DNA of 64,000 bases from Raja brachyura (taxonomy: Eukaryota): the NCBI GenBank assembly GCA_963514005.1, contig OY740791.1:51832001-51896000 (forward strand), in the 5' to 3' direction. The translations under genes and the position numbers were made by a program. Under the pieces are notes generated by a model. The model had not been told where the DNA came from. It saw only the letters and a program-made list of their open reading frames with translations, and did not search any database. Positions 7,705 to 63,911 of this stretch are shown piece by piece; within the stretch, counting starts at the first letter, position 1; every line of letters begins with the position of its first letter.

Positions 7705-7961
7705 CTGTGAAAAACATATCAATGAGATTCAGGGTGAGTAGTGGTGTGTACAGTCCAATGACTGGGCTCAATCTCACCTCAGCTGAAAACCTAGACCCGC
7801 CCCTCATTCTTCTAAACTCCAGCAAGTCCAAGCCCAGAGCCACAAACACTCATCATACGTTAAACCAATCATCCCCTGGGGCATTTTCATAAACATTTGT
7901 TTTATTTTCATCACTTCAGACCCGCACTGCAATCTCTGCACCTTTGTGCTGGTTTGCTTTT

Positions 7962-13769: not shown

Positions 13770-15112
13770 CTGTTGGAAAGAGAAAAAAATGAAGGAATAA
13801 CATTTTAAGCACATTTTCTCCACTCCATGTCTGTAAACATTAATTTTGAATTTCATTTATTTCCAGAATTCTCCACAGGTGTAAAGGGATTGGGATTAGT
13901 GCATTGCTTTAACGTTTGATCTCCCACAGAACCTCCAGTGAGACGGACACAGATATCTGTCTGGAATAACCTGGCCTGATCCAGGGATATCTCATGACAT
14001 GAGAAGAGTGAGTGGGAGAAAGACGGAGGTGGAAGGGCGTTTGTGTCGGGTCTCCAGCCGGTTTTCCTTGTGACGGAGTTTCCTGATGTGGGTGGAGGTC
14101 AGGCGGATCCTGTACACACCGCATCCCCGGCACTTGTCGGACAGACCTGGAACAGAATAATCATGCTCCTGCCTCCCTCCCTGCTCCTCATTCCACAGTG
14201 ATTTACAACATAGAACAGTTCAGCACAGGAACAAGCCCCTCGGCCCCCTGTGTCGAGCATAATGCCAACTCTTATCTGCCTAGACATAATCCATATCTCT
14301 CCCTGCACGTCCATGTGCCTATTAAAAAGTCTCTCAAATCCCATTCACACATCTCCCTCCATCACTACCAGCAGCATGTTCCAGCCACTCACCACTCTCT
14401 GTGTAAAATACTTGCCCTTCACATCTCCTTCACACTTTGCCTCTCTCACCTTAAAGCCATGCCCTCTAGTATTTGATATTTCCATCCGGGGGAAAAGATT
14501 CTATCTACACTGACCTTGCCGCTCATAATTTGGTATAATTCTATCAATCCTCACTTCAATGTCAAACATTCCAGAGAAAACAATCCAAGTCTATCCAACC
14601 TCTCCCTGGAGCTAATACCCAGTAACACAGACATCATTCTTGTAAACCTTCTCAGCCCTGTTTCCAAAGACTCTGCATTTTTCCTCTAATGGGGCATCCA
14701 GAACTGCTTGTAATGCTTGGAATCCGGCCTAACCAAAGTCCTGCAAAGCTGCATCACATCCTGACTTCCTGACTTGTGCGTGTTCCTCAAGCAACCAGAC
14801 AGTAATAAATAAAACTTGCTTCTTGTTGTCGGGGGGGGGGGGGATTAGTGGGAGGAGATAAAATTGTTTGTTGTCATGCACACTTGTCATTCAGCCCGCC
14901 GGGGAATGTGTGTGTGTGTCCCATGCTTTAAAAGTGATTTACTATGCCCCAAGCCGTCTGTCCCCGCGGCCGGGGTGGGGGTGAATCACCCGGTGTGGGT
15001 GTCAGGGTCCGGGGGTTGGAGGGGGGGGGGTGGGGAGGGGCAGACGGCTCGGGGCAGAGTAAATGCGGAACGCACAAAACACCAGAATCCGTGGAATGTT
15101 TCAACCGAAGAT

Positions 15113-15305
15113 GGCCACAAAAGGCTGGAGTAACTCAGCAGAACAGGCAACATTTCTGGACAGAAGGAATGGGTGACTTGTTGAGACGATTCTTCAAACC
15201 TGAAGACAGAGTCTGAAGAGTCACGACCCGAAATGCCACCCATTCCATCTCTCCAGAGATGCTGCCTGTCCCACTGAGTCACTACAGCATGTTGTGTCTA
15301 CCTTT
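15113..15305. repeat. Penelope-derived palindromic short repeat (related copies at about 470-570, 20300-20420 and 46735-46930)
   Basis: GCTGGAGTAACTCAGC..CAGGCA(G)CAT(C)TCTGGA arm with its inverted copy around CTGAAGA..CCCGAAA. Confidence 0.55.
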
Positions 15306-15351
15306 GCTGTCAGTGCTAGTTTTCTCAACTTCCAGAGCCTCTCGGCATAAG

Positions 15352-16172
15352 TGGGGGAGAGAGAGAGGAGAGAGAGAGGGGGGAGAGGGACAACAAGGGA
15401 GAGAGAGAAAAAGGGAGAGAAAGAGAGGATAGAGAAGGGATAGAGAGGGGGGAGAGAGAGAAGGGGCAGAGAGTAGGGTGAGAGAGAGGGGGGAGAGAGA
15501 GAAGAGGGAGAGAGAGAGAGAGAAGAGGGAGGGAGGGAGAGAGAGAAGGGGGAGAGGGAGAAGGGGAGAGAGATAGAAGGGGGGGAGAGAGAAGGGGAAG
15601 AGAGAAGGGGAGAGAGGAGAGAGGGGAGGGGGGAGAGGTGGAGAGAAGGGAGAGAGAGGAGGAGAGGAGGGAGAGAGAGAGGAGGGAGAGAGAGAGGAGG
15701 GAGAGAGAGAAGGGAGAGAGGGAAGGGTAAGAGAGAGGGGTGAGAGAGGGGTGAGAGAGAGAGGATGGGAGAGAAGTGGGAGAGGGGGGAGAGAGAGGGG
15801 TGAGAGAGAGGAGAGGGAGAGGTAGGGGGATATAAAGGAGGAGGAGAGAGAATAGGAGAGAGAGAAGGAGAGAGAGAAGGAGAGAGAGAAGGGGAGAGAG
15901 AAGGGGGAGAGAGATAAAGGGGGAGAGAGATAAAGGGGGGAGAGAGATAAGGAGGAGAGAAAGACAGAAGGGGAGAGAGGAGGGGGAGGGAGGAGGGAGA
16001 GAGGAGGTGGAGAGAGGGGGGAAGAGAGGGGGGAGAGAGGGGGGGAGAGAGGGGGGGAGAGAGGGGGGGAGAGAGGGACCGAGAGGGGGAGAGAGGGAGA
16101 AGGGAGAGAGAAGGGAGAGAGAGAGAGAGCGGGAGAGAGGAGAGGGGGAGAGAGAAGAGGGGAGAGAGAAGT
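15352..16172 (+). repeat. Polypurine (GA-rich) low-complexity tract, about 820 bp
   Basis: Almost only G and A on the plus strand; source of spurious L/S/P-rich ORFs. Confidence 0.95.
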
Positions 16173-17229
16173 GGTAGACGGGGGTGTGGGGGTCATTTTC
16201 CCACACAAGCCATAGGTGACTGGGCAATCTGAACGCAAGCACCAAGTTGTAAGCGGCCGATGGTGCGCATCCCTCGGGACAGCCTCCATTCTCCCATGGC
16301 CACCCTCCGCAGGCTGTGGGTCGGGTGGAGCGGAGGTGTGGGGTAATGTTCATCTCTCCACAGTGATGTGATGGACGCGGGGGACTGGGCCAATCGTTGA
16401 CAAGTCCCGCCCCCAGCAAAGTCATGTCCGTTATTTGACTTTTTTGTTGAGGGGCATTTCCCAGTGCCAGTGTTTGGGAATATCAGAGTATTCCTGCTCG
16501 TTGGCTTGTAGGTGATGCCGCCTTTCGGGTAGGTAGCATTTCGGCAGAGCAACCATTCGGCGAGTTTGCTTTTAGGCGATGCAGCCTTTCGGTGAGTCGC
16601 TTTTAGGCGTCCCGCCCTATCGGTTAGTTTGCATTTAGGCGTCCCATCCTTCGGTTAGTTGCGTTTCGGCTTCTTTTACATTTGGTTATTCGGCTTCCAC
16701 TTCTTTGATTCGGCTTCTGTCCATCGGCGCCACGTCCGGGTACCGGGGGACTTTACCAAGTGCCTTACTAAAATTACTGTAGACAATGCCATGTAAAATT
16801 CATGCCTACTGTCTTTAATTAATCTGTTTTGTTCCAAGTGGGAGTCAATTTTATACCAAAGAATATTTTCCAATTGTTTCCTACCATTGTCATGTGAATC
16901 ACAGTTTTTTGCTGAATTCTCTACCCCATTTTAAACAAATAAACCATTTTAACTCCCATTCCCATACTGATCTTTCAGTCCTTAGCCTCCTCCTTTGCCA
17001 GAGTGAGGCAACACACAAACTAAAGAAACCACACTTCATATTTCTCTTGGCTATCTGACAACTTAATGATATGGACATTGAATTCTTGACTTTCAGAAAA
17101 CAAATCCCCAAACAATCCACCCCACCTTTTTACTGACATTTTATTTAATTTCATTTTGTTTTCCCTTTTCCCTTGCTCCTCTCATCCCTGGAGATATCTG
17201 ATACCTCACCTACATCCCCTAACTCCAGT

Positions 17230-20240: not shown

Positions 20241-23200
20241 TTGAATGTGGAGACACTGAAAGTATCTGAAGATGTTTTTATGTTGTTTTAGATTTGTATA
20301 AAACAAGGAACTGCAGATTCTGGTTTACCAAGAAAAGGCACAAAATAATGGAGTAACTCAGCATGTCAGGTAGCATCCCTGGAGAACATGGCTAGGTGAT
20401 GTTTTGGGTTAGGACCGTTTTCTTCAAAAATCATTTTGTAAATTGTTTTTATTCTGCCTAAAGTTTATTTTTAAATTTTAAAAGAAATGTGAGGTTAGAA
20501 GGGCACAAGGTGTAATTACTGTGTTTTCCAAGCTCATTCAGAAGATAATATATATCTGACAGATCCCAAGTACAATGAGGGATTCTGCCTTTCTCCATAT
20601 CACATTCAGGACCGGAAGCAAAATTCAGAGCAATGGTTAAGGCTGCATTAAGTGCTATCATGCAATTCAACCCCAATGATTCGTCTATTTTGAGCTCTGG
20701 GCTGTTTAACTTCTTGTTTTTTTCTCAACTAAGGGGAGTAGGCTGCATCCGTGGCTGACAAGAGAAGTTAGGGATTTTATCACTTAAAATCGTATGCTAT
20801 TCTTCCTAAAATAGTGTTATGATATTATTAAAAATCAACAGTAGTAGTCATAATTATCAAGCATTTAAATTTAACACCCCACCCCTATATAAAAATCCCT
20901 TAAGGCAAATATGGAGCTGGAACCATTAACATCTTTTTTTTTTAACAACTGAAGTCGGTAGATTAATAGCCATGGTAGTGTGGCTTACACTAACTACACT
21001 AAACATAGCTGTAGTCACCCTTTTCTTTCTGCACATCACTAACACCATTAACATTTTTTATTTTTATTTTGTTTCTTATATTTTATATAATGTACTATAT
21101 TATTTCAGTTATGGTTGGCATTATACAGTTGGTTTGAAGAGATATGTATGTAAGATAAAGTTACAAGTATTAAAATTCATCGATCTGATGCATGGGTATG
21201 AGGTTTGGATGGATATGCTGAGACATCTACTCCATTATAATCCACCTTAATAACAAAATGCAAGATATTAATATGAAAACTGGGGGTGATGGAATCACCT
21301 TCTGCAGTTGGAATATAAAGGGAATTAATGAACCAATTAAAAGAGGTAAGGTTTTATATCATTTAAATAGACTTAAAACAGACATAGTCTTCCTTCAAGA
21401 GACACACCTTAAAAAGGATGCGCAACATGGACTAACAGCAAAATGGATTTCTAAAGTACATCATTCTTCATTTACACATAAGTCTAGAGGGGTTGCAATA
21501 CTTATTCGTAAAGGCATACCATTTAAACATAGCTCAATAATAGAAGATACTGAGGGTAGATACATAATAGTTACGGGTGAATTATATTCAAAGAAAGTCG
21601 TTCTTATGAACATATATGGACCTAACTTTGATAATCCGCTGTTTTTTAAGAAAATATTTAATACTATTCCTATATCTACACAACATAATCTAATAATTGG
21701 GGGTGATTTAAACTGTACTTTAGATAATTATCTAGATAGATCATCAACTAAAAGGAAAGCTATATCTAAATCAAGCGAATTCATAAATTCTTTTATTAAT
21801 ACTGCAAATGTTAATGATGTCTGGAGAACTGATAATCCCTCTGGTCGGGAATATTCATTTTATTCTCCTGTATTCGGAACCTATTCAAGAATAGATTATT
21901 TTTTAATAGACTCAAAGTTAATTCCATTTGCGTATGACTCAAAATACCATAATATTATTATTTCAGATCATGCTCCATTAACCATTAACATTTAAGATAA
22001 AATTAAAGGGTATAACTAATAAATACTCTCAATGGAGACTCAACCCTCAAATATTAAATGATAAGGCTTGTTATGATCATCTGGTAAAACAGATTAAATT
22101 TTTTTTTGAGACTAATGACAAACCTGGAATTTCTTCGTCACTTCTTTGGGACACATTTAAAGCCTTTATGCGTGGTGCTATAATATCTGCGCAAGGACAC
22201 CTTAATAAGGAAAACCGAAAGACTCAACAAATGTTGGAAAATGAAATAAAGCAATTAGATATTGAAAATGCAATATCTCCATCTAAGGTGATATATAATA
22301 AAATTACAATATTAAAATATAAGCTAAATAAAATATACTCAAATCATGTTATTAAACTTTTTCAACAAACTAAAAAAGTACATTTTGAATTCGGGGATAA
22401 ACCACAAAAACGCCAGCTTAGAAAATTAGATGAGGAAAAAATGATATATAAAATCAGATCTGAAAAAAGGAGAAATATTAACTTTACCAAAAGATATTAA
22501 TGACAGATTTCTGTATTACTATCAAAAACTTTACTCAACTAAACTGACTGGACAATCAGATGGAATGGAAACATTCCTACATGAATATCATATTAAAGGT
22601 TTAGATCAAGAAGGCAGAGACTTGTTAGATGCTGAAATATCAGTAAAATACATTGAGGAATCAATCAGATCGTTGAAAAATGGAAAAGCTGCTGGCCCCG
22701 ATGGCCTAAGTGTTGAATTTTATAAGAAGTTTCATGACTTGATTTCCCCATGTTTACAAACAATATATAAATATGCTTACGAACAAGGAAAGTTACCAGA
22801 AACTCTAAATGTGTCTACAATCACACTAATTCCTAAAGTAGATAAGGATCTAGAAGATCCTGGGTCATATAGAGCAATTGCTCATCTAAATACTGATCAA
22901 AAAATATTAACTAAAATTTTATCTCAAAGGTTAAGTTTAGTGATTAATAAATTAATACATCGTGATCAAACAGGCTTTATTCCCAAACGTTATTCCACTT
23001 ATAACTTGAGACGTCTATTCAATATCATATATTCAAAAAGAATTAATGATATTGAATTAGCTGTCATTTCATTAGATGCGGAAAAAGCATTCGACCAGGT
23101 TGAATGGCCTTACTTATTCAAGATAATGCAGAATTTTCAACTGGGGGATAGATTTTGTAAATGGGTTAAAATTTTATACTCTAACCAAACAGCAAGAATA

Positions 23201-44640: not shown

Positions 44641-45075
44641 GAAACAGAGAAACATAGAAAATAGGTAAAGAAGGAGGCCATTTGGCCCTTCGAGCCAGCA
44701 CCGCCATTCATTGTGATCATGGCTGATCATCCACAATCAGCAGCCTGTGCTTGCCTTCTCCCCATATCCCTTGATTCAGTTAGCCCTAAGAGCTAAATCT
44801 AACTCTGTCTTGAAAACATCCAGTGAATTGGCCTCCACTGCTTTCAGCGGCAGAGAATTTCACAGATTCACTACTCTCTGGTTGAAAATTTTTTTCTCAT
44901 CTCAGTTTTAAATGGCCTCCCCTTTATTTTTCGTCAAGGGAAAAAAACTGCAGAAGGACCTCTTTACTCCTATACTCAAATCCTCTCATTATGAAGGCCA
45001 ACATGCTATTAGCTTTCTTCATTGCCTGCTGTATCTGAATGTTTACTTTCAGTGACTGGTGTACAAGGACACCCA
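44641..45075 (-). mobile_element. CR1-like LINE 3' fragment
   Basis: AGAAACATAGAAAATAGG tail and 3' UTR matching the other copies. Confidence 0.8.
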
Positions 45076-45953
45076 CTGATCAGTAACTCCCACATGCTGC
45101 ATTATGAACACATACTGTAGCTTCCCTTGCCATCTCCAGCCAAGTACTGTTTATATTTTCATAGCCCATATACAATTCAGAGATTCATGATCAATGATCA
45201 AGCAGATTGTATTTAGAAAAACAATCATATTCTTCAGCACTTTCACATTTTATAAAACTATTTGTCAGGATTGAACAGAATTATAACAATTTACAGGTCT
45301 ATTTGTGCCACTCCAATAATGTGACCAAGCATTTCTGGGTGTGGATTGTGCTTGCAGAAAGGGCATGTATTTTCTCGTCACATACACATACGAGGTGTGC
45401 AATGAAACAAAAAGTGGCAATGCTTGTGGATTGTGTTAAAAACTACAAAACAGAATGAATCAGAATCACATATTCATATATTACATATTTTTGAGAGAAA
45501 AAAACAAAAAAAAAATAGCAATTTAAAAAAGACACCACACGACCCAACTATCTGCCCCCATCACCACCCTCGGCAACGCGTTCTTGGCACCCACACGCTT
45601 GTGAAAAAAGTACTCTTACACATCCCCTTTAAACTTTGCATCCCACATCCTCCCCCCCCCATCTTTATCTTAAGGCAATGCCCTCCAGTATTTGATATTT
45701 CCATCCTGGGAAAAAAGTTCAGAATATTCACCCTGTCCTGCTTTTCCTTAGGATTGTTTGCATTCACATCTAAAATGATCCCTCTGGCCATATTTACAGT
45801 TCTCCCTAACCCCCAGTGCTCTGAGCCCCAGCTTGGCCATTCCCCCAGTACAAAACATAAAAGCTACAGCAGTTGGAAATAAAAATTCAGTTCACAAAAC
45901 AGTTTCATTCTACATTTCCGTCTCAATGAGTGGAACTTTTTTTTCTGTTTCAT

Positions 45954-46022
45954 TCACATCTTTGTTTGTGCTATTTGTGCATAGATGACAGATGAATCGT
46001 TGTTCCTTGAAGGAGCCAGGTA
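45954..46022 (-). CDS. Gene B terminal coding exon with ITIM 2 and stop
   Basis: Phase 0, TTCTCTCTTTTAG acceptor; YLAPSRNNDSSVIYAQIAQTKM*. Confidence 0.78.
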   Translation of the reverse strand, partial: YLAPSRNNDSSVIYAQIAQTKM

Positions 46023-46155
46023 CTAAAAGAGAGAATAACAATTACGTTTATACAATTTGTTGGCATATATTCTTATATCAGCAAAAGTTGCAGAAGATTC
46101 CAGAAATTGAGAATGCGCTACTTGATATTTCACCACAAGGAATGAATGTACTGAC

Positions 46156-46199
46156 CATATCTGTCTCTTGGTTGGAGGGTGATTTTCCATCACGGTGCC
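46156..46199 (-). CDS. Gene B cytoplasmic linker exon
   Basis: 44 bp, phase 1-0, CACAG acceptor and ATG|GTCAGT donor; GHRDGKSPSNQETDM; bridges the phases of the two ITIM exons exactly. Confidence 0.7.
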
Positions 46200-46623
46200 C
46201 TGTGATAGTTGGAAACATCACAATTAAAGGATGATACTGGTGGATCACACTGACAAAGGATGTGATGATGGAATACAAATGTCTGAAACGTATAGCTTTT
46301 CACTTCATGATAAAGGATCAGCAAGACATTGATGTTCAGAAATCTCAATTGCAATCTCTCGTTGTGACTTCAGCTCATATGTCAGTGCTCAGATCTCTCG
46401 AGGGGTCTTGAACCCACTCAGAGCAAGTTGGAGTATCAACGGAGTCTCAGCTGACTGTCCTAGAACATGTCAATGGGTAGCGTGAGGGACATAGGCCCAG
46501 GAATGCTGAATGCGGTTCTAAGATGCCCAAACATTCAAGATTTCAGACCCAGTGCCAACTATCAGTAACTTGATAAAAATAACTAAAACATGATTTAAAA
46601 AAAAAAGAAAAATAGTGATTTAC

Positions 46624-46686
46624 CAGTTGCCGCTTTTTTCTGGAAGGCGATAGATCCATAATGGATATCTTCTGTTTCTGCAGAGA
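46624..46686 (-). CDS. Gene B cytoplasmic exon with ITIM 1
   Basis: 63 bp, phase 1-1, TTCTTCATTTCAG acceptor and G|GTAAAT donor; SAETEDIHYGSIAFQKKAAT. Confidence 0.75.
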
Positions 46687-48723
46687 CTGAAATGAAGAAT
46701 CAATTTATATAAGTGTCAAGGCCTTCATTTAGTATAGGAAGGAATGGCAGAGGCTGGTTTAAGCCGAAGATGGACTCAACATGCTGGAGTAATTGAGCGA
46801 GGCAGGCAGCATCTCTGGAGAGAAGAAATGGGTGAAGTTTTGGATCTGAAGAAGTGTCTCGACTCAAAACGTCACCATTCCTTATTTCCAGAGATGTTGC
46901 CTGTCCCGCTGAGTTACTCCAGTTTTTTGAGGCCTTCGTGTTGACTAGACTAGATTAGACTGCTGAAGTATATTATTGGTTGAGTGCTATCCAGTAAAGG
47001 AAAAGTATAATACATGAATACAATAAAGCTGTCAACAGTGCATAGATCAAGGAAAACAGGTACAACATTTAGTGATATATGGAATATTGAAATCCAATAA
47101 GGTCCGATTACAGAGAGCAAAATAAGAATGGGATTACTTCTAAATTAAATTAACATTGAATATTGTTCCAACAAATTTGTCTCTTTAGTTGCCTGGAGCT
47201 TTGGGGAAGAATTTCTAGCACTTAGGTTTGTAGGGGAATGGCCAGGCCCATGGAGATTCGGCATTGAGGCAGCAACCAGTCTAACCTGAGGGCAACATCA
47301 ACCAGGCTGTTTGATGGTCAGCATGACAGGAGTGGCCATTCCAATGGAGGGGTGGCACCATGCGAGTGATCAGGACGACCATTGACTAACTGAGATACTT
47401 GACGAAACGGCACCTGTCAAGTAAGGCACATGCTGGAGAACTGAGCTTTAACTGTGCTGATAAAATTAGAGACTGATCAACAGTTTCCAAGCTTTCATCA
47501 TGAATATTGTTGCCAGAGGCTGATGTTGTACAGCAAGGATCTTTGCCTCACGATCTTCAGGGTTGGTCTAATTTTCTCCTACTTTTGAATCAATATCTGA
47601 AACGAAATAATTGCATGAAGAGAGGAAGCAGGACTTGAGACGAGTTGAATTGCTCTTAAATGGAGCTAGAAGCAACACAATACAAGCAACCCAAATGGCC
47701 TCCTTTCATGCTGTAACCCTCAGTGATTTTCTCAAACGCCACTGTTGAGCCATCAGTAACTCAGGGCTCAGCCTCCAAAGGCACACACCCACAGGTACGA
47801 TCGTGTACTGCAGTTCTGTGACTGAGGTTGCAGTGAGCTTGGATCCTGTAGGTGATGAAGATTAAAGACACCCATTGCTCCTGCCAATTAGCTGCACTCC
47901 AGGGGAGGATTGTTGAACTGAGGTGAGAGACGGAGACGGGATTTAATAATAATGATAATAATAATATATTTTATTGTCATTAACATAAGTGCAACGAGAT
48001 TTGGTTTGCAACTTCGAGATTTCAGTTTGCAACCACCGAGAACAAAGTTTGTAAAAATGAACATTTGACCAGTAACATCAACACAGACTAAAGTGCGAGG
48101 CTGGGGGAGACAGTCCAGGGGGGTGTGGGGGTACTCAGCAGGGCCGGTTCAGAGCCGCTATAGCTCTGGGAATGAAGCTGTTCCTGAGTCTGGTAGTGCG
48201 GGCGTAGAAGGCCTTGTAACGTCTGCCGGAAGGGAGTAGTTTGAACAGTCAATTACAAGGGTGAGAGGAGTCTTTATGTATGCTGACGGCCTTCCTGAGG
48301 CACCGTGTGTGGTAGATGCCCTCCAAGGCTGGTAGCGGTGTCCCAATAATCTGTTGCGCTTTATGGACAACGCGCTGAAGAGCTCTCCTCTCCGCCTCCA
48401 TGCAGCTGAGATACCACACAGAGATGACAGTAATGACAAGTCATTGCTTGACCTTAGTGTGAACTGGGATGGACTAACTGGTTGGAATTATGAACTGCCT
48501 GCAATTGTGCAGCAGATGGGAATTTAGTTACATTTCATAAAGCTGTTAATTTTGAGAGATTCTCCACAATCCATCTCATTTGGCAGGATCGGGAAGTGTA
48601 TTGCAACCTAAGATCCAACAGTACAACAAATCTCCAAAAGATCCCATCATTGTATAAAATCATGAGAGGAATAGTTCAGGTGGATGCATAGAGTCTCTTG
48701 CTCAGAGTGGGAGAATTAACGTA

Positions 48724-49945
48724 GAAACATAGAAACATAGAAAATAGGTGCAGGAGGCCATTTGGCCCTTCGAGCCAGCACAGCCATTAATTGTGATCAT
48801 GGCTGATCGTCCCCAATCAATAACCCATGCCCGCCTTCTCCACATATCCCTAGATTCCACTAGCCCCTATAGCTCTATCTAAATCTCTTAAATCCATCCA
48901 GCGATTTGGCCTCCACTGCCCTCTGTGGCAGGGAATTCCACAAATTCACAACTCTCTGGGTGAAAAGGTTTTTTCTCACCTCAGTCTAAAATGGCCTCCC
49001 CTTTATTCTAAGACTGTGGCCCCTGGTTCTGGACTCGCCCAACATTGGGAATATTTTTCCTGCATCTAGCTTGTCCAGTCCTTTTAGAATTTTATATGTT
49101 TCTATCAGATACCCCCTCATCCTTCTAAACTCCAGTGAATACAAGCCTAGTCTTCTTAATCTTTCCTCATATGACAGTCCCGCCATCCCAGGGAACAATC
49201 TTGTGAACCTACGCTGCACTGCCTCAATCACAAGGATGTCCTTCCTCAAATTAGGAGACCAAAACTGTATGCAATACTCCAGATGTGGTCTTACCAGAGC
49301 CCTATACAACTGCAGAAGAACCTCTCTACTCCTATACTGAAATCCTATTGTTATGATGGCCAATATTCCATTAGCTTTCTTCACTGCCTGCTGTACCTGC
49401 ACACCAACTTTCAGTGACCGTTGCACAAGGACACACAGATCTCGCTTCCCCCCTACCTAACCTAACCCCATTGAGATAATAATCTGCCCCCTTGTTTTTG
49501 CCATCAAAGTGGATAACCTCACATTTATCTAGATTATATTGCATCTGCCACGCATCTGCCCACTCACTCAACCTGTCCAGGTCACCCTGCAACCTCCTAA
49601 CATCCTCTTCACAGTTCACATTGCCACACAGTTTTGTGTCATCCACAAACTTGCTAGTGTTGCTCCTAATTCCCTCTTCCAAATCATTAATATATATGGT
49701 GAACAGTTGCGGCCCCAACACCGAGCCTTGCGGCACTCCACTCGCCACTGCCTGCCATTCTGAAAAGGATCCATTCACTCCTACTCTTTGCTTCCTGTCT
49801 GTCAACCAATTTTTTATCCACGTCAACACCCTACCCCCAATACCATGTGCTCTAATTTTAGTCACCAGTCTCCTGTGCGGGACTTTATCAAAGATTTTCT
49901 GAAAGTCTAGATACACTACATCCATTTTACTTGTCACATCCTCAA
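48724..49945 (-). mobile_element. CR1-like LINE 3' 1.2 kb
   Basis: [27 protein letters not shown]; (AGAAACAT)n tail. Confidence 0.92.
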
Positions 49946-51252
49946 TTAAGAACCAGAGTCGCATAGGTATAAGGTGAAGGTGGAAAGATTTTATAGGAAT
50001 GTGATGGGTAACTGTTTCACGGATAGGCCACGGGTTTCACGGTGTATGGAATGACTGCCAGAGGAGGAAGTTGAGGCAAGGCCTATTGTGATGTTTAAGA
50101 AGCAATTAAACAGGTACATGGATAGGACAGGTTAGAGGGATATGGGCCAAAAGCAGGCAGGTGGGACTAGTGTAGATGGGACATGTTGGTCAGTATGGGC
50201 AAGTTGGGCTGAGGGTCCTGTTTAACACTGTATGATTACTCTATGACACTATTTAGTGAAAATCTTCCTCTTTCATATGGTCTCCCAAAGTGTAACACTT
50301 CACATTCCATCTGCCTTGTATAAACCCATATTTCCAACAGATTTATATCCTGCTGTATCCTTCGACACTTGAGTTGTCTTTAAGTTTAGATCATTTAGAT
50401 TAGTTTAGATTAGTTTAGTTTAGTATGAAAACATTATAACCATATGTAATCAATGATTCTGTAGTCCGTAGGATCAGGCTTGGTGATTCTGCAATGTTTA
50501 AATTACTTGTTTTCAAAAGTTATTGGGTTCATACTCTGCTCCATGTTACTAGTACATGATCATGTTGGGTGGATCTGAGCACTTCTAAAGGACTATTACA
50601 TTGTCACAGATTACCTGGACATTAGTCAAAGACCCTCTGAGAATACCACATTTATCTTAGAAGCACAAATTTAAATTTGACAAACTAAATTTATGCAAAG
50701 GTAGACATGATTAATCTATTGCATCATTTCCCAAGCAAATGTAGTCAATGGTTTGAATGGAATTCTTTTGTTTATAAAGAAAAAACAATGAGCGTAAATA
50801 AGTATCAGTATGACTTTAAGAATTGAGTGCTCCATGTGCTGGTGACCGTGGTGAATTGTTGCTCCAGGCACTGCTGTTTAGTTGAGAGCTACTGCCTTCA
50901 GTAAAGAATGTTCTGTTCATACCGTGGTATCTCTCTGATAGACTCCATGTGCCATAACATATAAGGACACACTCCAGATTGGAAGAGTATCTGAACATAC
51001 AATTGAAACTGACACTCCACTGTCGTATTGTGGGATTGATGCCACATTGGATGTACCACCCTATCAGAGATTAACATTGTGATTCTTTGTAAAACTAAGA
51101 TCTTTCTGCCCTCTCAGTTGGACACAAGTGATCTGAAGTCAAAGGAGATTGGTCATGACAACATTGCTATCTTAGACAAAATAGCAAACTGAAATAACAA
51201 ACTGAAAAAAGTGAAATCCACCTTCTCAACAACAGAAACACAAACACATTTA

Positions 51253-52080
51253 TGGACTGATCCAGGATGGGGAGGAAGTGACACAGCTGGCATCCTGGTG
51301 CCATCGCAACGACCTGGAGCTCAATGCTCTTAAGACAGTGGAATTGATTGTGGACTTTAGGAGAGCTCCCACTCCCCTCATCCCACTCACCATGCACAAC
51401 ACCACAGTCACATCTGTGGAATCTTTTAAGTTCCTGGGAACCATAATTTCCAAGGACCTTAAATGGGGGGCCACCATCGACTCCACAGTCAAAAGGGCAC
51501 AGAGGATGTACTTCTTGTGGCAGCTGAGGAAACACAATCTACCACAGGCACATGGTCCAATTCTATATAGTCATCGTAAAGTCCGTCCTCACCTTCTCCA
51601 TCATGGTCTGGTTTGGCACAGCCAACAAGCACCACATCCGGAGGATGCAGCGAATCGTCCAATTAGCTGAGAAGGTTATTGGCTGCAACCTTCCCACCAT
51701 TGATGAACTGTACACTGCAAGGGCCAGGATGCGAGCGGGTAAGATTATCTCTGACCCCTCTCACCCTGGCCACAAACTCTTTGAGTTACTTCCCTCTGTA
51801 AGGCTACTCTGTACTGTCAAAGCTGCCACAGCCAGACACAAAAACAGCTTTTTTTCCACGAGTAGTAGCTTTACTCAATAACCAAAAATCTGTAGCCTCC
51901 TTTTGCTCTGGTATTTTATTTAATTCACGTTTAATCGATAATGTTCTATTGTTAATGTTTAATGTTATGAGATTCCTAACTGTCACTGTATGTCATGTTC
52001 TCACTTGCGGGCGGAGCACCATGGCAAATTCCTTGTATGTGAATATACTTGGCCAATAAACTTATTCATTCATTCATTTA
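51253..52080 (+). mobile_element. Rex1/Babar-like LINE 3' fragment
   Basis: LELNALKTVELIVDFRR, FKFLG, SHPGHKLFELLPS; tail CAATAAAC(TTCA)n. Confidence 0.85.
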
Positions 52081-52181
52081 ATCTCAGTAACTGTTCTTTT
52101 CTCTTTTTTTCTCAATGAGAAAATTGTCATTGCCAGTTTTTAGAATCATATGCTCATTAAGAACTTCATCATGCACCTTAC

Positions 52182-52295
52182 CTCTCCTCTTACGAATTCC
52201 CAGAAACACCACCACTGCCAGGATAATGAAGAGCAGAGAAGTCACGATGCTAATAATAATGACAGTAATAATAATTTTTTCTGGAGAGGAATCAC
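52182..52295 (-). CDS. Gene B transmembrane exon
   Basis: 114 bp, phase 1-1, CAG/GTAAGG; DSSPEK-IIITVIIISIVTSLLFIILAVVVFLGI-RKRR (uncharged TM plus basic stop-transfer). Confidence 0.9.
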
Positions 52296-52746
52296 CTGTC
52301 AGAAGAATAAGCACAGATGTTACTTTGAGTTTCTAAACCATCATTCCAAAGCATTTCCAATCTTCCAGCTGTAATCATGTGGCCTAGTTTATAATTAACC
52401 AGCAGAGTCCAGAGGTCTTGGACTTACTTCCTGATCCAAGTTAACAGACCTCGCTCAGGAAGATCTGAGAGCTTTAATTGTCCTCAGTACCCATCAGTTA
52501 ACGACAGGAAACAAATGACACAAGGTTATTGTTCCTGCTTTCAATTAGGCAATCCCGTCTGGCATGAGATGTGTGCAATAGCTGGATCCAAGTGGGCTGT
52601 GATGCTGCCCATTGTCCAACGGGTTCTATATTTATAAACTCAAACAGCACGGAAACAAGACCTTCCCCATTACTTGCCTATGCCAATTAAGATGCCCTAT
52701 CCACGCGAGTCCTACTTTGACCCGTTTGGCACATATCCCTCTAAAC

Positions 52747-53492: not shown

Positions 53493-55518
53493 TTTCATAT
53501 ACCCAGCACCTATCTGTGTGAAAAAGTTGCCTCTCAATTTCCTATTAATCCTTCCCTTCTCAGTTTTATTCCCTTACCCTGGTTAAAAGACTCTGCATTC
53601 ACCCCATTTATTCCCCACATAATCTCATACATCTTTATAATATAATTCCTCACTTTCCTGCCCTCCACAGAATAATGTCCTTCTCCCTATAGCTCACGCC
53701 CTCAGGTCCTGGCAACGTCCTCATAAATCTTCCCTGACTCCTTCCAGTTTAACAAAATCTTTCCTATAGCAGGGTGACCAAAACTGAACACAATACTCTA
53801 AATGTGGCCTCATCAACGTCTTGTACACTGTAACATAACATCCCAACTTCTATACACAATACTTTGACTGATGAAGGCAAGCCTTTTTGACAGTATGCGT
53901 GACAAATGCTATAATGTATGCGACAAGGAATGCCCAAAATAGCAGAATGGTACACAGATTGTAGTGCAATGTGAAGTAGTATAAAAAAAATTTTTTGTCT
54001 GAAAATACTTTGACGAACTCTCACAAATAATTTTCAATCAGCAACCTTAATTATATTCATCTTTCCACAGATGCTCTCTGACCTGATGAATGATTCCAGC
54101 ATTCTGATTTTATTTCATATTTAAGCAGACGTAGTTCTTTTTCATTTGATTGCGTACTTGACCAACCTATTGCTATTCTATTGCAATGCAGCAGAATATT
54201 CTGCTGAATGTTTTGTGTATAATCTTTCATTTCTTGTAGTAAGGTTGACCAGTTCATCAATGCTGCACAGATGCCAATCTGTTCACAAACCCATTTAGTT
54301 TAAGGCTCCGTGATGGACACTTCAGACTGGGCAGCAGCCGGCTGTAGTTAGACCAAAGGACGGGCAGGCTTGTGTAGCAACTCCTTGGAGGTCAAGGTTC
54401 AAATTCAGATCTGCCCCAACGGAGTCTGATGGAAACTGTGATGAGGATGCGCACATGGGAAGGCTTCTCCACCTTACAGCATGGAAGAGATGTCAAGGTG
54501 AGTCAGAGATCCCATCTCCAACCTCCTGCACGGCTTTCTGTAGAGCCATGAGCACAGGTTACCAATCATAGGGTTGGGGACACAACAGTGGGAGAGGGAG
54601 TGGAGGTGGCCTCTCCCTGGTGCAGCGGCTGCTGGAGCAGGGTTCTACTGTCACTGAGGCACGGGTAGAGGAAAACCAAAGTCTTCATTCCTCAGTGGAC
54701 TCTCAGACGACTGCAGTCAGAGCTCTGTTGTTGTCACACGGGGGGAGACTGCTGCTCTGCAGAAGAAAATCAACACCAACCAAGAGCACACAGTGACCAT
54801 CAGGAATCAAGCTGCTGCTGCCAGGGAGAGTTTTACATGTGTTGGTGTATTGAAGCAGCAGGGTCGGCAAAACAAAGCTTTCCCGAAGGAGTGTTAAAGC
54901 AGAAAGCATTAAATGATGTTGGATATTTATTGAGTTCACTTGACTTCTGAGCCATTGAATGAAAGTGCAGATGGAGACATGAGGAAGGGCTTGATAAAAT
55001 ATATCTCAAATGCAACAGTGCTCATTGTGTGTCTGAACTTTGTCCTGAATTCATGTCTGTGTGTGACAGGACACACCCATCGCCACATTGACAATGACAC
55101 AACTCCTCTGTTGTTTTAGGCCAAAAATGTCCAAAAGCTAATTTTGAAATTAATTCTCACCACATTTGTGATCTTGAGGAGGTAGTCATTGGATACTAGG
55201 AGTAACTACCCCACACATTTAATGCCCAAGGAATGGGTGAAATCCAATTTCTGGACAAATGTGTCACATTTATCTACAGTAGCAGCAAGCTACCGACATC
55301 TACATATAGTCCTGAGAATGTTTATTTTTTCTTCTCCAGTTTTGTGGATTCAGATGTTACTGATGGTGCCAATGTGGGAACCACAGACCCTTCCACACAG
55401 CGGGCAGGAGTTACCAGAGATACTAATCACAGTGGGTTATGAAATATGATATGTTAGAAGAAATAAATAACATTACGTTTCTGTGGAAATTACAAAGAGC
55501 AGAAGACAAGACACTTAC

Positions 55519-55791
55519 CATTGTGCTGCAATGACTTCAGATCACACAGAATTAAAACCTTGGGAGTATTTTGATGAAACAAACCACATGTATGATTCCT
55601 TTTGTCTGCAACAGCTTTTGGAATGATCAGCTTTAAAGATCTCTCTTCCTGCCTTAGCTCCTTGGAAATTTCCTCTCCCACTATTTTGCCATCACCATTG
55701 ATGCAAGCAAGTTTCATTGACTCAGTGATCTTTGACACAGTGCAGCTCAGGGTAATGTTGTCTCCCTCAGTCGCTGCGTTAGATTGTACAG
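55519..55791 (-). CDS. Gene B Ig D8 exon (C2-like, divergent)
   Basis: 273 bp, phase 1-1, CAG/GTAAGT; EGDNITLSCTVS..LACING..NHTCGLF. Confidence 0.85.
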
Positions 55792-56896: not shown

Positions 56897-57235
56897 CTGT
56901 AACTGTGATTAGATCAATGGTGACATATTTATTTGATCCCATGAAACATGTGTAAACTCCAGCATCTGCAAATCGCACGGGGACAATCCTCACACGGACA
57001 TTCGTGCCATTCACATTTCCCTCTGTGGTTACCAGTCGATTCCCAAAGTTACTCGTGTCGACATGGATCGGCTCAGACCTGTGAGAAGAAGCTATTTCCT
57101 TCACTTGATTCTGGAAATGTTGTGAATGCCAAGTCCATTTAGTTTCACTGAGCTCTGGAGAAGCTTCACAAATCAAGTTGAGTTCACTGTGATCTGTGAC
57201 TGAGCGATAAACTTTGTACGTCTTGTTGTGTAAAT
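56897..57235 (-). CDS. Gene B Ig D7 exon (V-set)
   Basis: 339 bp, phase 1-1; 18 of 113 aa differ from gene A D7; DAGVYTC. Confidence 0.9.
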
Positions 57236-58031: not shown

Positions 58032-58304
58032 CCTGATCCACTTCAACGTTGATGTCTCCAGTGAGAACAATGGAGCCATTTTCCTGCGCTTCCCATGTGT
58101 ACAGATCGGGATTTCCTGCTCCAACGTGTTGGACCATCAGATAGACGATGTTATTCAGACGGATCTGATCAGTGTTGTTCTTCCTGTTCTGCTGAGACGA
58201 GCCTCTTGGTTTCCAGTGAAGACTGACGGTATCTACGAGTCTGGAGATGGTACAGCTGAGGGTCATGTCACTGCCCATTACTGGCCTCGGTGAGTCTCCC
58301 TCAA
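58032..58304 (-). CDS. Gene B Ig D6 exon (C2-like, F-strand Trp)
   Basis: 273 bp, phase 1-1; 3 aa longer than gene A D6; LYTWEA. Confidence 0.88.
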
Positions 58305-59548: not shown

Positions 59549-59887
59549 CTTTGATCCCAAATAGTTCCCACTGTCTCAGGATTTTCCCACCAGGCTGTGT
59601 CTGATTCCAGGTGAACAGTCCTGCAACTTGAAAGGTGGGCTTCCTGATCCTCAGATCAAGGGTACCCCAGTCTGCATGCATCCTCTGGGAAAGGCCTGGT
59701 ATTTGATTGTACTCATCACTCCATTGTACGGCCCACCGCTGATCTTCTCTATGAAAAGTGGCCAATCGCTTTGTGGTTTGTTGCCCTGAGTGTGACCTCC
59801 ATTCCAAGTTAATGGCGCCAATTCCAGGACTGTCTGGTCCTTTCAGTACAAAATAGCCTTCCTGGTGGAAAAAGTAAATAGTAGTCC
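59549..59887 (-). CDS. Gene B Ig D5 exon (V-like, cysteine-less)
   Basis: 339 bp, phase 1-1, CAG/GTATGT; close paralog of 4846-5190. Confidence 0.88.
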
Positions 59888-60228
59888 CTGCCAGAAAAGG
59901 AAAATAGAGTTTTAAATTCGGACGATAACTTCTCAGTATGATCTGTGTCCCAATGAATACTGTGAAATTGTTTTCTTTAGAAAGGTTGTTAGTTATAGTT
60001 AATAGAATCATAGAATCTTCTAGCATTGAAACAGGCCCTCTAACACAACCCAGCGACGTCGACCTGTGCACTCTTTCATATTTGTCACATCTGTTTGGTC
60101 AATTGTCTGCAATGCCAATGTGATTCAAGTGTGATTTGCCCAGCAGTTTTAAATAAATCTATATTTTACAACAAGCAGTGAAGTACATCCAGAGAACAGC
60201 TTAGCATTGCGTCATCAATGTAACGTAA

Positions 60229-61817
60229 CGGTACCCGGACGTGGCGCCGACAGACAAGAAGCCGAAGCTAAGAAGTCGAAGCCAAAGAAGCAAAGGGAAA
60301 CGAGGCGGAAATGCTAATAAACCGAAAGAGTTCGAAGACGAAACGATTACTAACCGAAAGGATGGGACGCCTAAATGCAAACTAACCGAAAGGGCGGGAC
60401 GCCTAAAATCCAACGAACCGAAAATCTGCATTGCCTAAAAGCAATGGCCGCTCTGGCAAAACGCCACCTACCAGAAAGGCGGCATCGCCTACAGGCCAAA
60501 GGACCGACTGCCGCTCAACAGAAACGTCCAATAACGGACATGACGTTATGGGGGGGGGGGGGGGGGGGGTACTTGTCAGGGATTGGTCCAGACCCCCGCA
60601 TCCATCACATCACTGTGAAGGTATGGGTCACACAGTGACACAGCTGGGTCACTGTGTGACAGCAGTCTCACCGGCTGGGTCACTGTGTGACACCAGTCTC
60701 ACCGGCTGGGTCTCAGTACAAAACGCCACCCATTCCGTCTCTCCAGAGATGCTGCCTGTTTTGTGCGTGGGAGCTTGGGTGCGTTCCGCAATCACCGAGA
60801 CAGTAATAAATAAAACATCTGTCCCCACACCCTGTGTGGGTGACGGGGTCCGGGGGTTGGAGGGGAGAAATCACCCTGGTGAGGAGATTGGGGTCCGATG
60901 GCGGTGCATCGCGGTCAGTGACTGAGGGACGTTCCCGCGGGTGGAGACGGAGGAGAGAGAAGGGGGAGAGAAGTGGAGAGAGAGAAGGGGGCGAGAGAGA
61001 AGGGGGGGGAGAGAGAAAGGAGGGAGAGAGAATGGAGAGAGGGGGGTGAGGGAGAGAGGAGGGGAAAAGAGGAGGAGAGAGAGAAGAGTGGAGAGAGAGG
61101 AGGAGAAAGAGTAGAGGGGAGAGAGAGGAGAGAGAAGAGGGGAGAGAGAGGAAAGAGAAGAGGGGAGAGAGAGGAGGGGAGAGAAGGGAGAGAGAGATGG
61201 GGAGAGAGAGATGGGGAGAGAGAGATGGGGAGAGAGGGAAGGGGGAGACGGGAGCATGGGGTTCATTTTCCCACACAAGCCATAGGTGACTGGGCAATCT
61301 AAACCCAAACACCAAGTTGAAAGCAGACAAAGGTGCGCATAGCTCAGGACAGCCCTCACTCTCCCGTGGCCACCGTCCGCGCGGGCTGTGGGTCGGGTGG
61401 AGTGGAGGTTTGGGACAATGTTCATCCCTCAACAGTGATGTGATGGACGCGGGGGTCTGGACCAATTGCTGACAAGCCCCGCCCCCCGACAACGTCATGT
61501 GCGTTATTGGACATTTCTGTTGTGCTGCAGTCGGTCCTTTGATCTGTAGGCGACGCCGCCTTTCAGGTAGGTGGCGTTTCCACAGAGTGGCCATTCGGTA
61601 AGTTTGCTTTTAGGCTATGCAGCTCTTCTGTTCGTTAGTTTTATGCGTCCCGCCCTTTCGGTTAATTTGAATTTAGGCGTCCCATCTTTTCGGTTAGTAG
61701 GCGTTTTCTCTTCGTAATCTTTCGGCTTATTGGCGTTTCGGCCTCATTTCCATTCGGTTCTTTGGCTTCGACTTCTTTGGTTCGGCCTCTCGTCCGTCGG
61801 CGCCACGTCCACACACG
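60229..61817. mobile_element. Foldback-like non-autonomous DNA element copy 2, with long imperfect inverted arms and GA core
   Basis: About 390-bp imperfect inverted repeats (60237-60620 vs 61430-61810); GA tract 60950-61250; AATGTAAC on both flanks; absent from the paralogous gene A intron. Confidence 0.75.
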
Positions 61818-61924
61818 AATGTAACAATACATCACAGTTAAGCTAGAAGTTTTATCATTTGACAAGCACATGAGATTGGCATCAGAGGAGAGCAGAAATG
61901 GTAGACAGTTACCACAAGCAATGA

Positions 61925-63650: not shown

Positions 63651-63911
63651 CATTGGGCTCCTTATAGTAAGGGACAAAAAGCCGGGGCAGGCCTTGATGA
63701 AACAAACCACATCTCCAGCTCCCTCTGCTTCTATCAACATTCTGAATAACCAGACTCAGTGATTTCTCTTCCACAGTCATTGTTTTTTCTCCAACATTTT
63801 TGCCATCACCATCGATCCAAACCAGTCTCATTGACTTGGTAACGTGAGACACAGAGCAGGTCAGGGTAACGTTGTCTCCCTCAGTCACTGCATCAGACGG
63901 CTCAGCGGTGA
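63651..63911 (-). CDS. Gene B Ig D4 exon (C2-like, WxC)
   Basis: 261 bp, phase 1-1; 16 of 87 aa differ from gene A D4; GSWRCGLF. Confidence 0.9.

What the first reader, a model, noticed from the sequence alone, without database searches (positions are those of the whole stretch)
45954..52295. Gene B has a canonical two-ITIM inhibitory tail hidden in micro-exons missed by the ORF track
Seen: the TM exon plus exons of 63, 44 and 69 bp join with consistent phases (1-1, 1-0, 0-stop) to give RKRR-VSAETEDIHYGSIAFQKKAAT-GHRDGKSPSNQETDM-YLAPSRNNDSSVIYAQIAQTKM*. Known: IHYGSI and VIYAQI fit the ITIM consensus (I/V/L/S)xYxx(I/L/V), and tandem ITIMs recruit SHP-1/SHP-2. CD4 signals through an Lck-binding CxC motif and mammalian LAG-3 lacks canonical tyrosine ITIMs, so a CD4/LAG-3-like ectodomain on a true ITIM tail is a notable combination. 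More exons may lie in the 5.5-kb intron.
Basis: partly seen in the sequence, partly recalled or inferred. Interest (0 to 1): 0.75.

Follow-up and report, generated by a model that had tools for sequence, protein, structure and literature searches.

The report
Hidden ITIM tail of skate receptor
Three tiny exons behind a skate immune-receptor gene do encode a classic two-motif inhibitory tail, and that tail is shared by a large, still unnamed family of fish receptors whose neighbouring gene carries the matching activating form.

Summary
On the minus strand, the TM exon (52295-52182) and exons of 63, 44 and 69 nt (46686-46624, 46199-46156, 46022-45954) have AG/GT borders and phases 1-1, 1-0 and 0-stop. 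They encode IHYGSI and, near the C terminus, VIYAQI. The ITIM consensus alone is not rare here (18 matches against 24.9±5.1 in shuffles). Homology is decisive. A profile of 26 tails from related shark and ray proteins scores 32.3 and 32.7 bits on the 63- and 69-nt exons. The next best of 3,795 fragments scores 3.8, and the best of 60 shuffles 16.6. The 44-nt exon fits between them in order but scores only 2.1 bits. Gene B is neither CD4 nor LAG-3. It belongs to a multigene family of V-C2 repeat receptors, annotated only as "uncharacterized", with ITIM-tailed members and members with a TM lysine and a short tail. LAG-3 is only a remote relative. No family-type extra exon lies in the 5.5-kb intron. 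No RNA evidence could be obtained, and the closest skate gene model stops before the TM exon.

The parts
63651..63911 (-). D4-type C2 Ig exon of gene B (261 nt, phase 1-1) with SWRC (the WxC motif). The earlier exons of the gene lie beyond the window edge.
   Evidence: Sequence, ORF, alignment with the other D4-type exons, 80% identical to skate protein P0070.
59549..59887 (-). D1'-type V-like Ig exon without cysteines (339 nt, phase 1-1).
   Evidence: No Pfam hit. A profile of three such exons finds only 40 proteins among 1.84 billion.
58032..58304 (-). D2'-type C2 Ig exon (273 nt). The F-strand Cys is replaced (LYTWEAQ).
   Evidence: 85-86% identical to skate proteins P0088 and P0070.
56897..57235 (-). 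D3'-type V-set Ig exon (339 nt).
   Evidence: Pfam V-set E 2.4e-6.
55519..55791 (-). D4'-type C2 Ig exon (273 nt), with HTC where relatives have WxC. Read-through of its donor gives GKCLVFCSL-stop.
   Evidence: 79% identical to L. erinacea P0070, whose model ends with the same read-through.
52182..52295 (-). Stalk and transmembrane exon (114 nt, phase 1-1). The TM segment is uncharged and ends in RKRR.
   Evidence: Weak tblastn matches to relatives' TM segments (E 0.2-1).
46687..52181 (-). 5.5-kb intron, mostly transposon fragments. No family-type tail exon was detected in it.
   Evidence: Retroelement ORFs. Repeat-level depth in all runs. Profile of membrane-proximal tail segments: best 3.9 bits anywhere in the window.
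46624..46686 (-). Cytoplasmic exon 1 (63 nt, phase 1-1): the membrane-proximal ITIM IHYGSI in an acidic context. An alternative in-frame acceptor lies 9 nt downstream.
   Evidence: 32.3 bits on positions 4-21 of the family tail profile. Its 3' border matches the cassette-exon border seen in Mobula isoforms X1/X2.
46156..46199 (-). Cytoplasmic exon 2 (44 nt, phase 1-0): linker GHRDGKSPSNQETDM. Its donor GTCAGT is the weakest splice signal.
   Evidence: Only 2.1 bits, but at profile positions 21-35, exactly between the other two exons.
45954..46022 (-). Cytoplasmic exon 3 (66 nt plus stop, phase 0): the distal ITIM VIYAQI, with 8 residues between its tyrosine and the C terminus.
   Evidence: 32.7 bits on profile positions 38-58, running to the profile's end.
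44923..45953 (-). Putative 3' UTR, up to the first AATAAA on this strand (at 44928).
   Evidence: Pattern scan. Not verified by reads.

Best explanation
Gene B is an inhibitory member of a large, unnamed family of fish immunoglobulin-superfamily receptors built from repeated V-C2 domain pairs. It probably has eight Ig domains, five of which lie in the window. Its mRNA most likely joins the uncharged transmembrane exon directly to three micro-exons. This gives a short tail of about 60 residues with a membrane-proximal ITIM (IHYGSI) and a distal ITIM (VIYAQI) near the C terminus, 40 residues apart. Shown here: the exons are present and intact, their phases fit, and their order and sequence are homologous to annotated tails of relatives from sharks, rays and, in looser form, ray-finned fishes. 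Inferred: when the receptor is brought next to an activating receptor, a Src-family kinase phosphorylates both tyrosines. The tandem SH2 domains of SHP-1, SHP-2 or SHP-2L then dock and dephosphorylate nearby signalling proteins. The downstream neighbour, gene A, has D1'-D3' domains 81-89% identical to gene B's and a diverged membrane-proximal domain (51%). An earlier finding reports that gene A carries a TM lysine and a tyrosine-free tail, so the two genes look like a paired inhibitory/activating couple.
For: Translations and splice borders. The tail profile built from 26 distinct relatives scores 32.3 and 32.7 bits on two of the three micro-exons, the next best of 3,795 six-frame fragments scores 3.8, and the maximum over 60 shuffled windows is 16.6. 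The three exons cover profile positions 4-21, 21-35 and 38-58 in order. Independent tblastn of relatives' tails hits the same two exons (E 4e-5 to 0.09). Of 107 family proteins examined, 23 have both tail motifs by a strict pattern and 34 have at least one. The species include S. canicula, Mobula, Narcine, Rhinoraja, Leucoraja, Heterodontus, Pristis, Chiloscyllium and Carcharodon. Mobula isoforms X1 and X2 differ by exactly an 18-residue ITIM cassette that ends where the 63-nt exon ends. Of 34 ray-finned-fish relatives, 14 also carry an ITIM consensus in their last 70 residues. The TM segment has no charged residue, whereas about 20 family members have K in the TM and short tyrosine-free tails. 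[quoted passage not shown]
Against: There is no transcript evidence. No listed run is on record as RNA. The three 'RNA?' runs laid on 46601-52300 cover only the transposon parts, with depth 0 in the five bins that lie wholly in unique sequence, the TM exon bin among them; the depth in the bin 46601-46790 that holds the 63-nt exon was not resolved and belongs most likely to the repeat beginning near 46760. No joint from the TM exon to the 63-nt exon is among the 15 joints listed; 812 more were not shown. The closest skate model, L. erinacea P0070 (79-85% identical over the last four Ig exons), ends by read-through after the D4' exon and has no TM or tail. The 44-nt exon has a weak donor (GTCAGT) and no significant homology of its own. 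Gene B lacks the YxN and AEYMSV-type tail segments that most long-tailed relatives have. The 40-residue spacing between the tyrosines is longer than the 23-30 listed for Siglec-7, CEACAM1, LAIR-1 and LILRB1 in a table of PMC7226588. Phosphorylation and SHP binding are inferred, not shown.
Confidence: 0.72

Rival explanations
1. The TM and tail exons are leftovers that gene B no longer uses. The gene would then make mainly a soluble, tail-less eight-Ig protein that ends by read-through after the D4' exon.
For: The closest annotated relative, P0070 of L. erinacea, ends in the same read-through peptide (GKCLVFCCL there, GKCLVFCSL here). Transposons fill 5.5 kb between the TM exon and the tail. 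The family's membrane-proximal tail exons are missing. No RNA was seen.
Against: All four downstream exons are open, keep AG/GT borders and compatible phases, and keep both tyrosine motifs at family-consensus level (32 bits each). A gene model that stops early is weak evidence. A soluble isoform and a membrane isoform can coexist.
Confidence: 0.13
2. The tail is expressed, but the two tyrosine motifs work mainly in another way. They could be YxxΦ sorting signals for endocytosis, or docking sites for SHIP, Csk or another SH2 protein, rather than a tandem SHP-1/SHP-2 site.
For: YGSI and YAQI also fit YxxΦ (read from the sequence). The tyrosines lie 40 residues apart, more than in the receptors listed in PMC7226588. 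Relatives combine these motifs with a YxN motif of the Grb2-binding type described for G6f-like in PMC3528668.
Against: Both motifs have the hydrophobic residue at position -2 that defines an ITIM. The layout of a proximal ITIM plus a distal motif near the C terminus is that of Siglec-5, Siglec-7/9, CEACAM1 and LAIR-1. The family also contains charged-TM partners, as inhibitory/activating receptor families do.
Confidence: 0.12
3. Gene B is the skate's CD4 or LAG-3 orthologue, or a recent hybrid of the two, that has acquired an ITIM tail.
For: The V-C2 repeat layout, WxC in the D4-type domains, and LAG-3 as the best single-stretch match among solved structures.
Against: It is one of many tandem paralogues with eight rather than four domains. 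It has neither Cx(C/H) nor (F/Y)xxL(D/E). Its tail is split over three exons, unlike LAG-3. D2-type domains have YxC. Passages of PMC10768021 say that shark CD4 and LAG-3 are already identified, with one of each per genome as the default.
Confidence: 0.03

Closest known systems
Unnamed fish (V-C2)n receptor family, present in databases only as 'uncharacterized protein', e.g. Rhinoraja longicauda LOC144599921 (XP_078267312.1), Leucoraja erinacea LOC129701493, Scyliorhinus canicula LOC119965406 (XP_038652085.1); also nurse shark 'obscurin-like protein' V9NJF3
   Same: The same cysteine-less D1-type V domain (profile E down to 6.5e-147). The Ig exons are 70-86% identical to skate members. The tail has the same two motifs in the same order.
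   Different: Gene B has the short tail version, without the YxN and AEYMSV-type segments. Its last C2 domain has HTC instead of WxC, and its D2' domain has lost the F-strand cysteine.
LAG-3 and CD4 (CD4/LAG-3 family)
   Same: V-C2-V-C2 order and WxC in the F strand of the D4-type domain. The family's D3-D4 unit aligns with both D1-D2 and D3-D4 of LAG-3, with WxC aligned (i-E 1.7e-5 and 7e-4). CD4 is matched at E 3e-6.
   Different: It is a multigene family, with the domain unit doubled or more. D2-type domains have YxC. There is no Cx(C/H) and no (F/Y)xxL(D/E). The tail lies in three exons. CEA scores as high overall (6.4e-14). Pfam sees only generic Ig models.
Tails of CD33-related Siglecs, CEACAM1 and LAIR-1
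   Same: A membrane-proximal canonical ITIM plus a second tyrosine motif close to the C terminus. Seen in print: Siglec-5 LHYASL and TEYSEI (one passage of PMC2722167); CEACAM1 VTYSTL and IIYSEV, and LAIR-1 VTYAQL and ITYAAV (table passage of PMC7226588).
   Different: The ectodomains are unrelated beyond the Ig fold. The tyrosine spacing is 40 here, against 23-30 in those receptors. Common descent of the tails was not tested.
G6f-like (G6fL) of teleost thrombocytes and mammalian G6F / G6b-B
   Same: Four Ig-like domains, a single TM, and a YxN motif in the tail (passages of PMC3528668). The nearest named clusters in the ESM Atlas for relative P0018 are 'g6f-like' and 'G6b-B' (score 0.96), which is a lead only.
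   Different: G6fL signals through an ITAM. Gene B has no ITAM and no YxN. No protein named G6f-like turned up in three word searches, and the Pfam G6B model gave no hit.

Membership tests
ITIM-bearing inhibitory IgSF receptors (functional class) | Type I membrane protein with an Ig-like ectodomain and an uncharged TM segment | tested here: met
   Pfam Ig and V-set hits on the exons. The TM exon translation has no charged residue in 27 hydrophobic positions.
ITIM-bearing inhibitory IgSF receptors (functional class) | At least one cytoplasmic (I/V/L/S)xYxx(I/V/L) motif | tested here: met
   IHYGSI and VIYAQI, both conserved in relatives.
ITIM-bearing inhibitory IgSF receptors (functional class) | The motif-bearing exons are part of the mature mRNA | tested here: inconclusive
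   No RNA holder is on record. The runs laid cover only repeats, and no TM-to-tail joint was listed. Support comes only from homology and phase.
ITIM-bearing inhibitory IgSF receptors (functional class) | Tyrosine phosphorylation, SHP-1/SHP-2 (or SHIP) recruitment, and inhibition of an activating signal | not testable with these tools
   This needs biochemistry. Only the presence of the SHP genes in sharks is taken from passages of PMC12151841.
Unnamed fish (V-C2)n receptor family | Cysteine-less D1-type V domain followed by C2, V and C2(WxC) domains | tested here: met
   Profile A1 finds 40 proteins, 22 of them at E<=1e-10. Domain order was read. Exon identities of 70-86% to skate members.
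Unnamed fish (V-C2)n receptor family | Inhibitory subtype: tail ending in ..[ED]xI[HQ]Yx[ST][ILV]xF.. and ..[VI][VI]Yxx[IV].. close to the C terminus | tested here: met
   32.3 and 32.7 bits against a profile of 26 tails, with controls.
CD4/LAG-3 family | Four Ig-like domains in V-C2-V-C2 order | tested here: inconclusive
   The order is V-C2-V-C2, but the unit is repeated (8 domains in gene A and in P0070, 16 in P0001).
CD4/LAG-3 family | WxC motif in strand F of both D2 and D4 (passage of PMC10768021) | tested here: not met
   D4-type domains: W404/C406 are nearly invariant in 26 relatives. D2-type domains: Y201/C203, that is YxC. In gene B itself the D2' domain has no F-strand Cys and the D4' domain has HTC.
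CD4/LAG-3 family | Cytoplasmic Cx(C/H) (CD4) or (F/Y)xxL(D/E) (LAG-3), with the LAG-3 tail in a single exon | tested here: not met
   Neither motif occurs in the four translated exons. The tail is split over three exons.
CD4/LAG-3 family | Conserved genomic neighbourhood, and one CD4 and one LAG-3 per haploid genome as the default | tested here: not met
   Two tandem paralogues lie in this window alone, and there are many per species.
CD4/LAG-3 family | Specific sequence or fold similarity above that to other IgSF proteins | tested here: inconclusive
   LAG-3 gives the best single stretches, but CEA has the best total score. A profile of the D4-type exons alone gives only weak hits to PD-1 and to the start of CD4 D1 (E about 5e-4).
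G6F / G6f-like | Four Ig-like domains, a YxN Grb2 site and (in fish) an ITAM split over two exons (PMC3528668) | tested here: not met
   Gene B has no YxN exon and no ITAM. Relatives have YxN but ITIMs instead of an ITAM. The only link is an ESM Atlas lead.

The most novel reading that the evidence does not exclude
Genes A and B are one couple of an ancient paired activating/inhibitory receptor system of fishes. It is built on CD4/LAG-3-like V-C2 modules. Its inhibitory tail module (a YxN site, a proximal ITIM-type motif and a C-terminal ITIM) has been kept from sharks and rays to sturgeons, eels, tarpon and salmonids, and no paper in the searched library describes it. If so, it may be the cartilaginous-fish counterpart of KIR/LILR-type leukocyte receptors. 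It may also belong to the same old 'proto-MHC' IgSF group as CD4, LAG-3 and G6F.
Probability: 0.3. Interest if true: 0.8.

Novelty: new variant of a known kind. Interest (0 to 1): 0.58.

Why it matters
No paired inhibitory/activating leukocyte receptor family of cartilaginous fish turned up in the literature searches made here. That gap bears on how NK-like and myeloid regulation worked in the earliest jawed vertebrates. This locus offers a concrete, testable couple: an ITIM-tailed gene next to a gene reported to have a TM lysine, with 81-89% identical outer domains. It also places them in a family that spans sharks to teleosts. The V-C2/WxC modules hint at a link to CD4 and LAG-3, so ligand studies (MHC class II, collagen or other) would be informative. 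For genome annotation, it shows that the family's signalling tails sit in 44-69-nt exons that ORF-based screens miss. At least one public skate model of the closest relative stops before them.

Tried and rejected
1. The ITIM consensus as evidence in itself was rejected. It is no more frequent than in shuffles.

2. RNA evidence was not obtained. The look-up of sequencing runs listed no run on record as RNA. Read laying on 46601-52300 with X2, X5, X6 ('RNA?') and X17 (DNA) showed only transposon coverage in the first three. X17 matches 46601-46823 with 0 differences, while four unique intron pieces show 31 differences in 1,965 nt. That is too little and too uneven to count as conservation.

3. 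Extra tail exons in the intron were not found. tblastn with relatives' tails and a profile of 22 membrane-proximal tail segments found none.

4. Membership in CD4/LAG-3 was rejected on motifs, copy number and tail exon structure (see the membership test).

5. The G6f-like link could not be tested. Word searches with A2, P0024 and P0026 returned no protein named G6f-like. The ESM Atlas search on the tail alone gave no usable hit.

6. The D4-type exon profile against PDB sequences gave only generic B-strand matches.

7. Literature. Searches found no paper on this family, its LOC numbers or V9NJF3. PMC4079198 only mentions a skate EST as a CEA homologue, and PMC4701786 had nothing relevant. Ohashi et al. 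2010 on G6F-like was seen only as a reference entry. What I say about its reporting similarity to CD4/LAG-3 is recalled, not read.


Full report
WHAT IS THERE. The gene lies on the minus strand. Reading the region and listing ORFs shows five Ig-domain exons of gene B in the window: a D4-type exon (63911-63651), D1' (59887-59549), D2' (58304-58032), D3' (57235-56897) and D4' (55791-55519). All are in phase 1-1. They are followed by a stalk/TM exon (52295-52182) and, 5.5 kb further on, exons of 63, 44 and 69 nt. One search printed the borders: all eight acceptors end in AG and all donors begin with GT. The tiny exons were translated one at a time. The phases are 1-1, 1-0 and 0-stop. The only weak signal is the donor of the 44-nt exon (GTCAGT). 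A second in-frame acceptor 9 nt inside the 63-nt exon would remove three residues and leave both motifs. I never joined the exons into one sequence for any search.

IS IT MORE THAN CHANCE? The ITIM consensus by itself is not. The minus strand from 52181 to 44000 holds 18 matches in three frames, and 200 shuffles give 24.9±5.1. Homology settles it. A profile of the three D1-type exons of the window (A1) was run against 1.84 billion representative proteins and found only 40. Their sequences showed that several end in tails with the same two motifs. I cut the tails of all stored relatives that have both motifs (28, of which 26 are distinct), built a profile, and searched all 3,795 six-frame fragments of the 64-kb window. 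The 69-nt exon scores 32.7 bits (profile positions 38-58, to the profile's end). The 63-nt exon scores 32.3 bits (positions 4-21). The next best fragment scores 3.8. In 60 block-shuffled windows the best score averages 7.3, with a maximum of 16.6. The 44-nt exon scores only 2.1 bits, which is not significant alone, but it aligns to positions 21-35, exactly between the other two. tblastn with individual tails gives the same picture. The 3' border of the 63-nt exon is supported by Mobula birostris isoforms X1 and X2. They differ by one 18-residue ITIM cassette that ends at the same position, just before G-H-R. A Heptranchias protein, P0107, carries that cassette twice.

WHAT THE FAMILY IS. The relatives come from chimaera, many sharks and rays, sturgeons, paddlefish, bichir, eels, tarpon, salmonids and mormyrids. 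Nearly all are annotated 'uncharacterized protein' or 'hypothetical protein', with a few automatic names such as obscurin-like, VCAM1-like, CD276 homolog and CEACAM-like. They have 3 to 16 Ig domains in V-C2 pairs. I examined 107 family proteins; seven weak non-family hits were dropped beforehand. By a strict pattern, 23 have both tail motifs and 34 have at least one. About 20 have a lysine in the TM segment and a short tail without tyrosines. That count includes a few Mobula proteins that have an arginine in the TM together with ITIM tails, and these are not of the activating type. This is the make-up of a paired inhibitory/activating receptor family. In ray-finned fishes the tail keeps the same plan: a YxN site, a middle [LIV]x-Y-xx-[FIL] motif and a C-terminal [VI][VI]Y[AS][ST][ILV]. 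Of 34 proteins printed, 14 have an ITIM consensus in the last 70 residues. Most long-tailed elasmobranch members also have a YxN segment and an AEYMSV-type segment between the TM and the first ITIM. A profile of 22 such segments finds nothing in the window (best 3.9 bits).

THE NEIGHBOUR. Gene A (exons from 13812 down to 588 on the same strand) has eight Ig exons. Its D1', D2' and D3' domains are 81, 89 and 84% identical in protein to those of gene B, while the membrane-proximal D4' domain is only 51% identical. An earlier finding of this scan (s1-881413) reports that gene A continues into the next window with a TM lysine and a tyrosine-free tail. I could not see that exon myself. My own survey shows that such forms are common in the family.

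IS THE ECTODOMAIN CD4/LAG-3-LIKE? Only remotely. Pfam sees generic Ig, V-set and I-set models and none of the CD4-specific ones. A profile of seven four-domain relatives (A2) against PDB sequences ranks CEA first (6.4e-14, the sum of many weak stretches). LAG-3 comes next (1.3e-12) with the two best single stretches (i-E 1.7e-5 and 7e-4). In these, the family's D3-D4 unit aligns to LAG-3 D1-D2 and D3-D4 with the WxC motif in register. CD4 follows at 3e-6. WxC is nearly invariant in the D4-type domain of 26 relatives, but the D2-type domain has YxC. Passages of PMC10768021 give WxC in both D2 and D4 as the family signature. They also give Cx(C/H) or (F/Y)xxL(D/E) in the tail and a single tail exon in LAG-3, and they state that sharks already have one CD4 and one LAG-3. 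Gene B meets none of these tail or copy-number criteria. The ESM Atlas puts relative P0018 nearest to clusters named 'g6f-like' and 'G6b-B' (0.96) and lists CD4 among weak structural neighbours (TM 0.35-0.45). That is a lead only, and three word searches returned no protein named G6f-like.

EXPRESSION. No listed run is on record as RNA. I laid three 'RNA?' runs and one DNA run on 46601-52300, which spans the TM exon to the 63-nt exon and stays within the 6,000-letter limit. The 'RNA?' runs cover only the transposon parts and have depth 0 in the five bins that lie wholly in unique sequence, the TM exon bin among them; the bin 46601-46790 holding the 63-nt exon has some depth, most likely from the repeat beginning near 46760. 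No TM-to-tail joint is among the 15 joints listed, with 812 not shown. So there is no evidence either way. Against use of the tail, the closest annotated skate protein (P0070, L. erinacea) ends by read-through after the D4' exon.

MECHANISM. Shown: a type I receptor gene with an uncharged TM segment, and intact, phase-compatible, family-conserved exons for two ITIM-consensus motifs 40 residues apart, the second near the C terminus. Inferred from established knowledge of ITIM receptors: phosphorylation by Src-family kinases, docking of the tandem SH2 domains of SHP-1, SHP-2 or SHP-2L, and local dephosphorylation that damps a co-engaged activating receptor. Passages of PMC12151841 report those phosphatases in sharks with conserved binding sites. 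The layout of a proximal ITIM plus a C-terminal second motif is that of Siglec-5 (PMC2722167) and of Siglec-7/9, CEACAM1 and LAIR-1 (table in PMC7226588), where the spacing is 23-30 residues. The longer spacing here, and the fit of both motifs to YxxΦ, keep alternative readings open.

VERDICT. The CD4/LAG-3 framing is only partly right. The thing of interest is the family: an uncharacterized paired-receptor family found widely in fishes. I rate it a new variant of a known kind, of moderate to good interest.

Noticed in passing
window 498-13812, minus strand: Gene A is a tandem paralogue with eight Ig exons (D1-D4, D1'-D4'). Its D1'-D3' domains are 81-89% identical to gene B's and its D4' domain only 51%. 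An earlier finding (s1-881413) says it ends in a TM lysine and a tyrosine-free tail in the next window.
   Followed up: partly
window 55490-55519, minus strand (just past the D4' donor): Read-through of the D4' donor gives GKCLVFCSL-stop. The L. erinacea model P0070 ends in nearly the same peptide. This may be a soluble isoform, or simply an incomplete model.
   Followed up: partly
window 46677-46686, minus strand: There are two in-frame acceptors 9 nt apart at the start of the 63-nt exon (tttcag|TCTCTGCAG|AAAC). Either keeps both ITIMs.
   Followed up: no
window 46018-46022 / 46156-46160, minus strand: A third tyrosine (D-M-Y-L-A-P) sits at the joint of the 44- and 69-nt exons. Relatives have N or L at that position, so it is not conserved.
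   Followed up: no
relatives P0117, P0124, P0130, P0141, P0142: Sturgeon, eel, tarpon and salmonid relatives keep a three-part tail: a YSN-type YxN site, an [LIV]xYxx[FL] motif, and a C-terminal [VI][VI]Y[AS][ST][ILV]. The tail module therefore seems older than the split between cartilaginous and bony fishes.
   Followed up: partly
window 24889-28803 (minus) and 8530-11147 (plus): Two copies of a large retroelement with gag-like, RT/RNase H-like and tyrosine-recombinase-like ORFs lie in opposite orientations between genes B and A. The family assignment (DIRS/Ngaro-like) is from memory and was not tested.
   Followed up: no
window 21258-23617 (plus) and 3574-4584 (plus): A LINE-like element with endonuclease and reverse-transcriptase ORFs, and a Tc1/mariner-like transposase ORF set inside a gene A intron. 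Both are named from the look of the ORFs only.
   Followed up: no
window 60200-61860 and 14860-16550: Two similar blocks, each a long CT-rich low-complexity core (translating as P/S/L-rich ORFs) flanked by inverted, related arms. One lies in the intron of gene B between the D4-type and D1' exons. They are probably one repeat family.
   Followed up: no
window 46601-46823 compared with 46923-51322 (run X17): The DNA run of 'organism F' matches the 63-nt exon and its flanks with 0 differences in 223 nt. Four unique intron pieces show 31 differences in 1,965 nt. This is too small and too uneven to call selection.
   Followed up: partly
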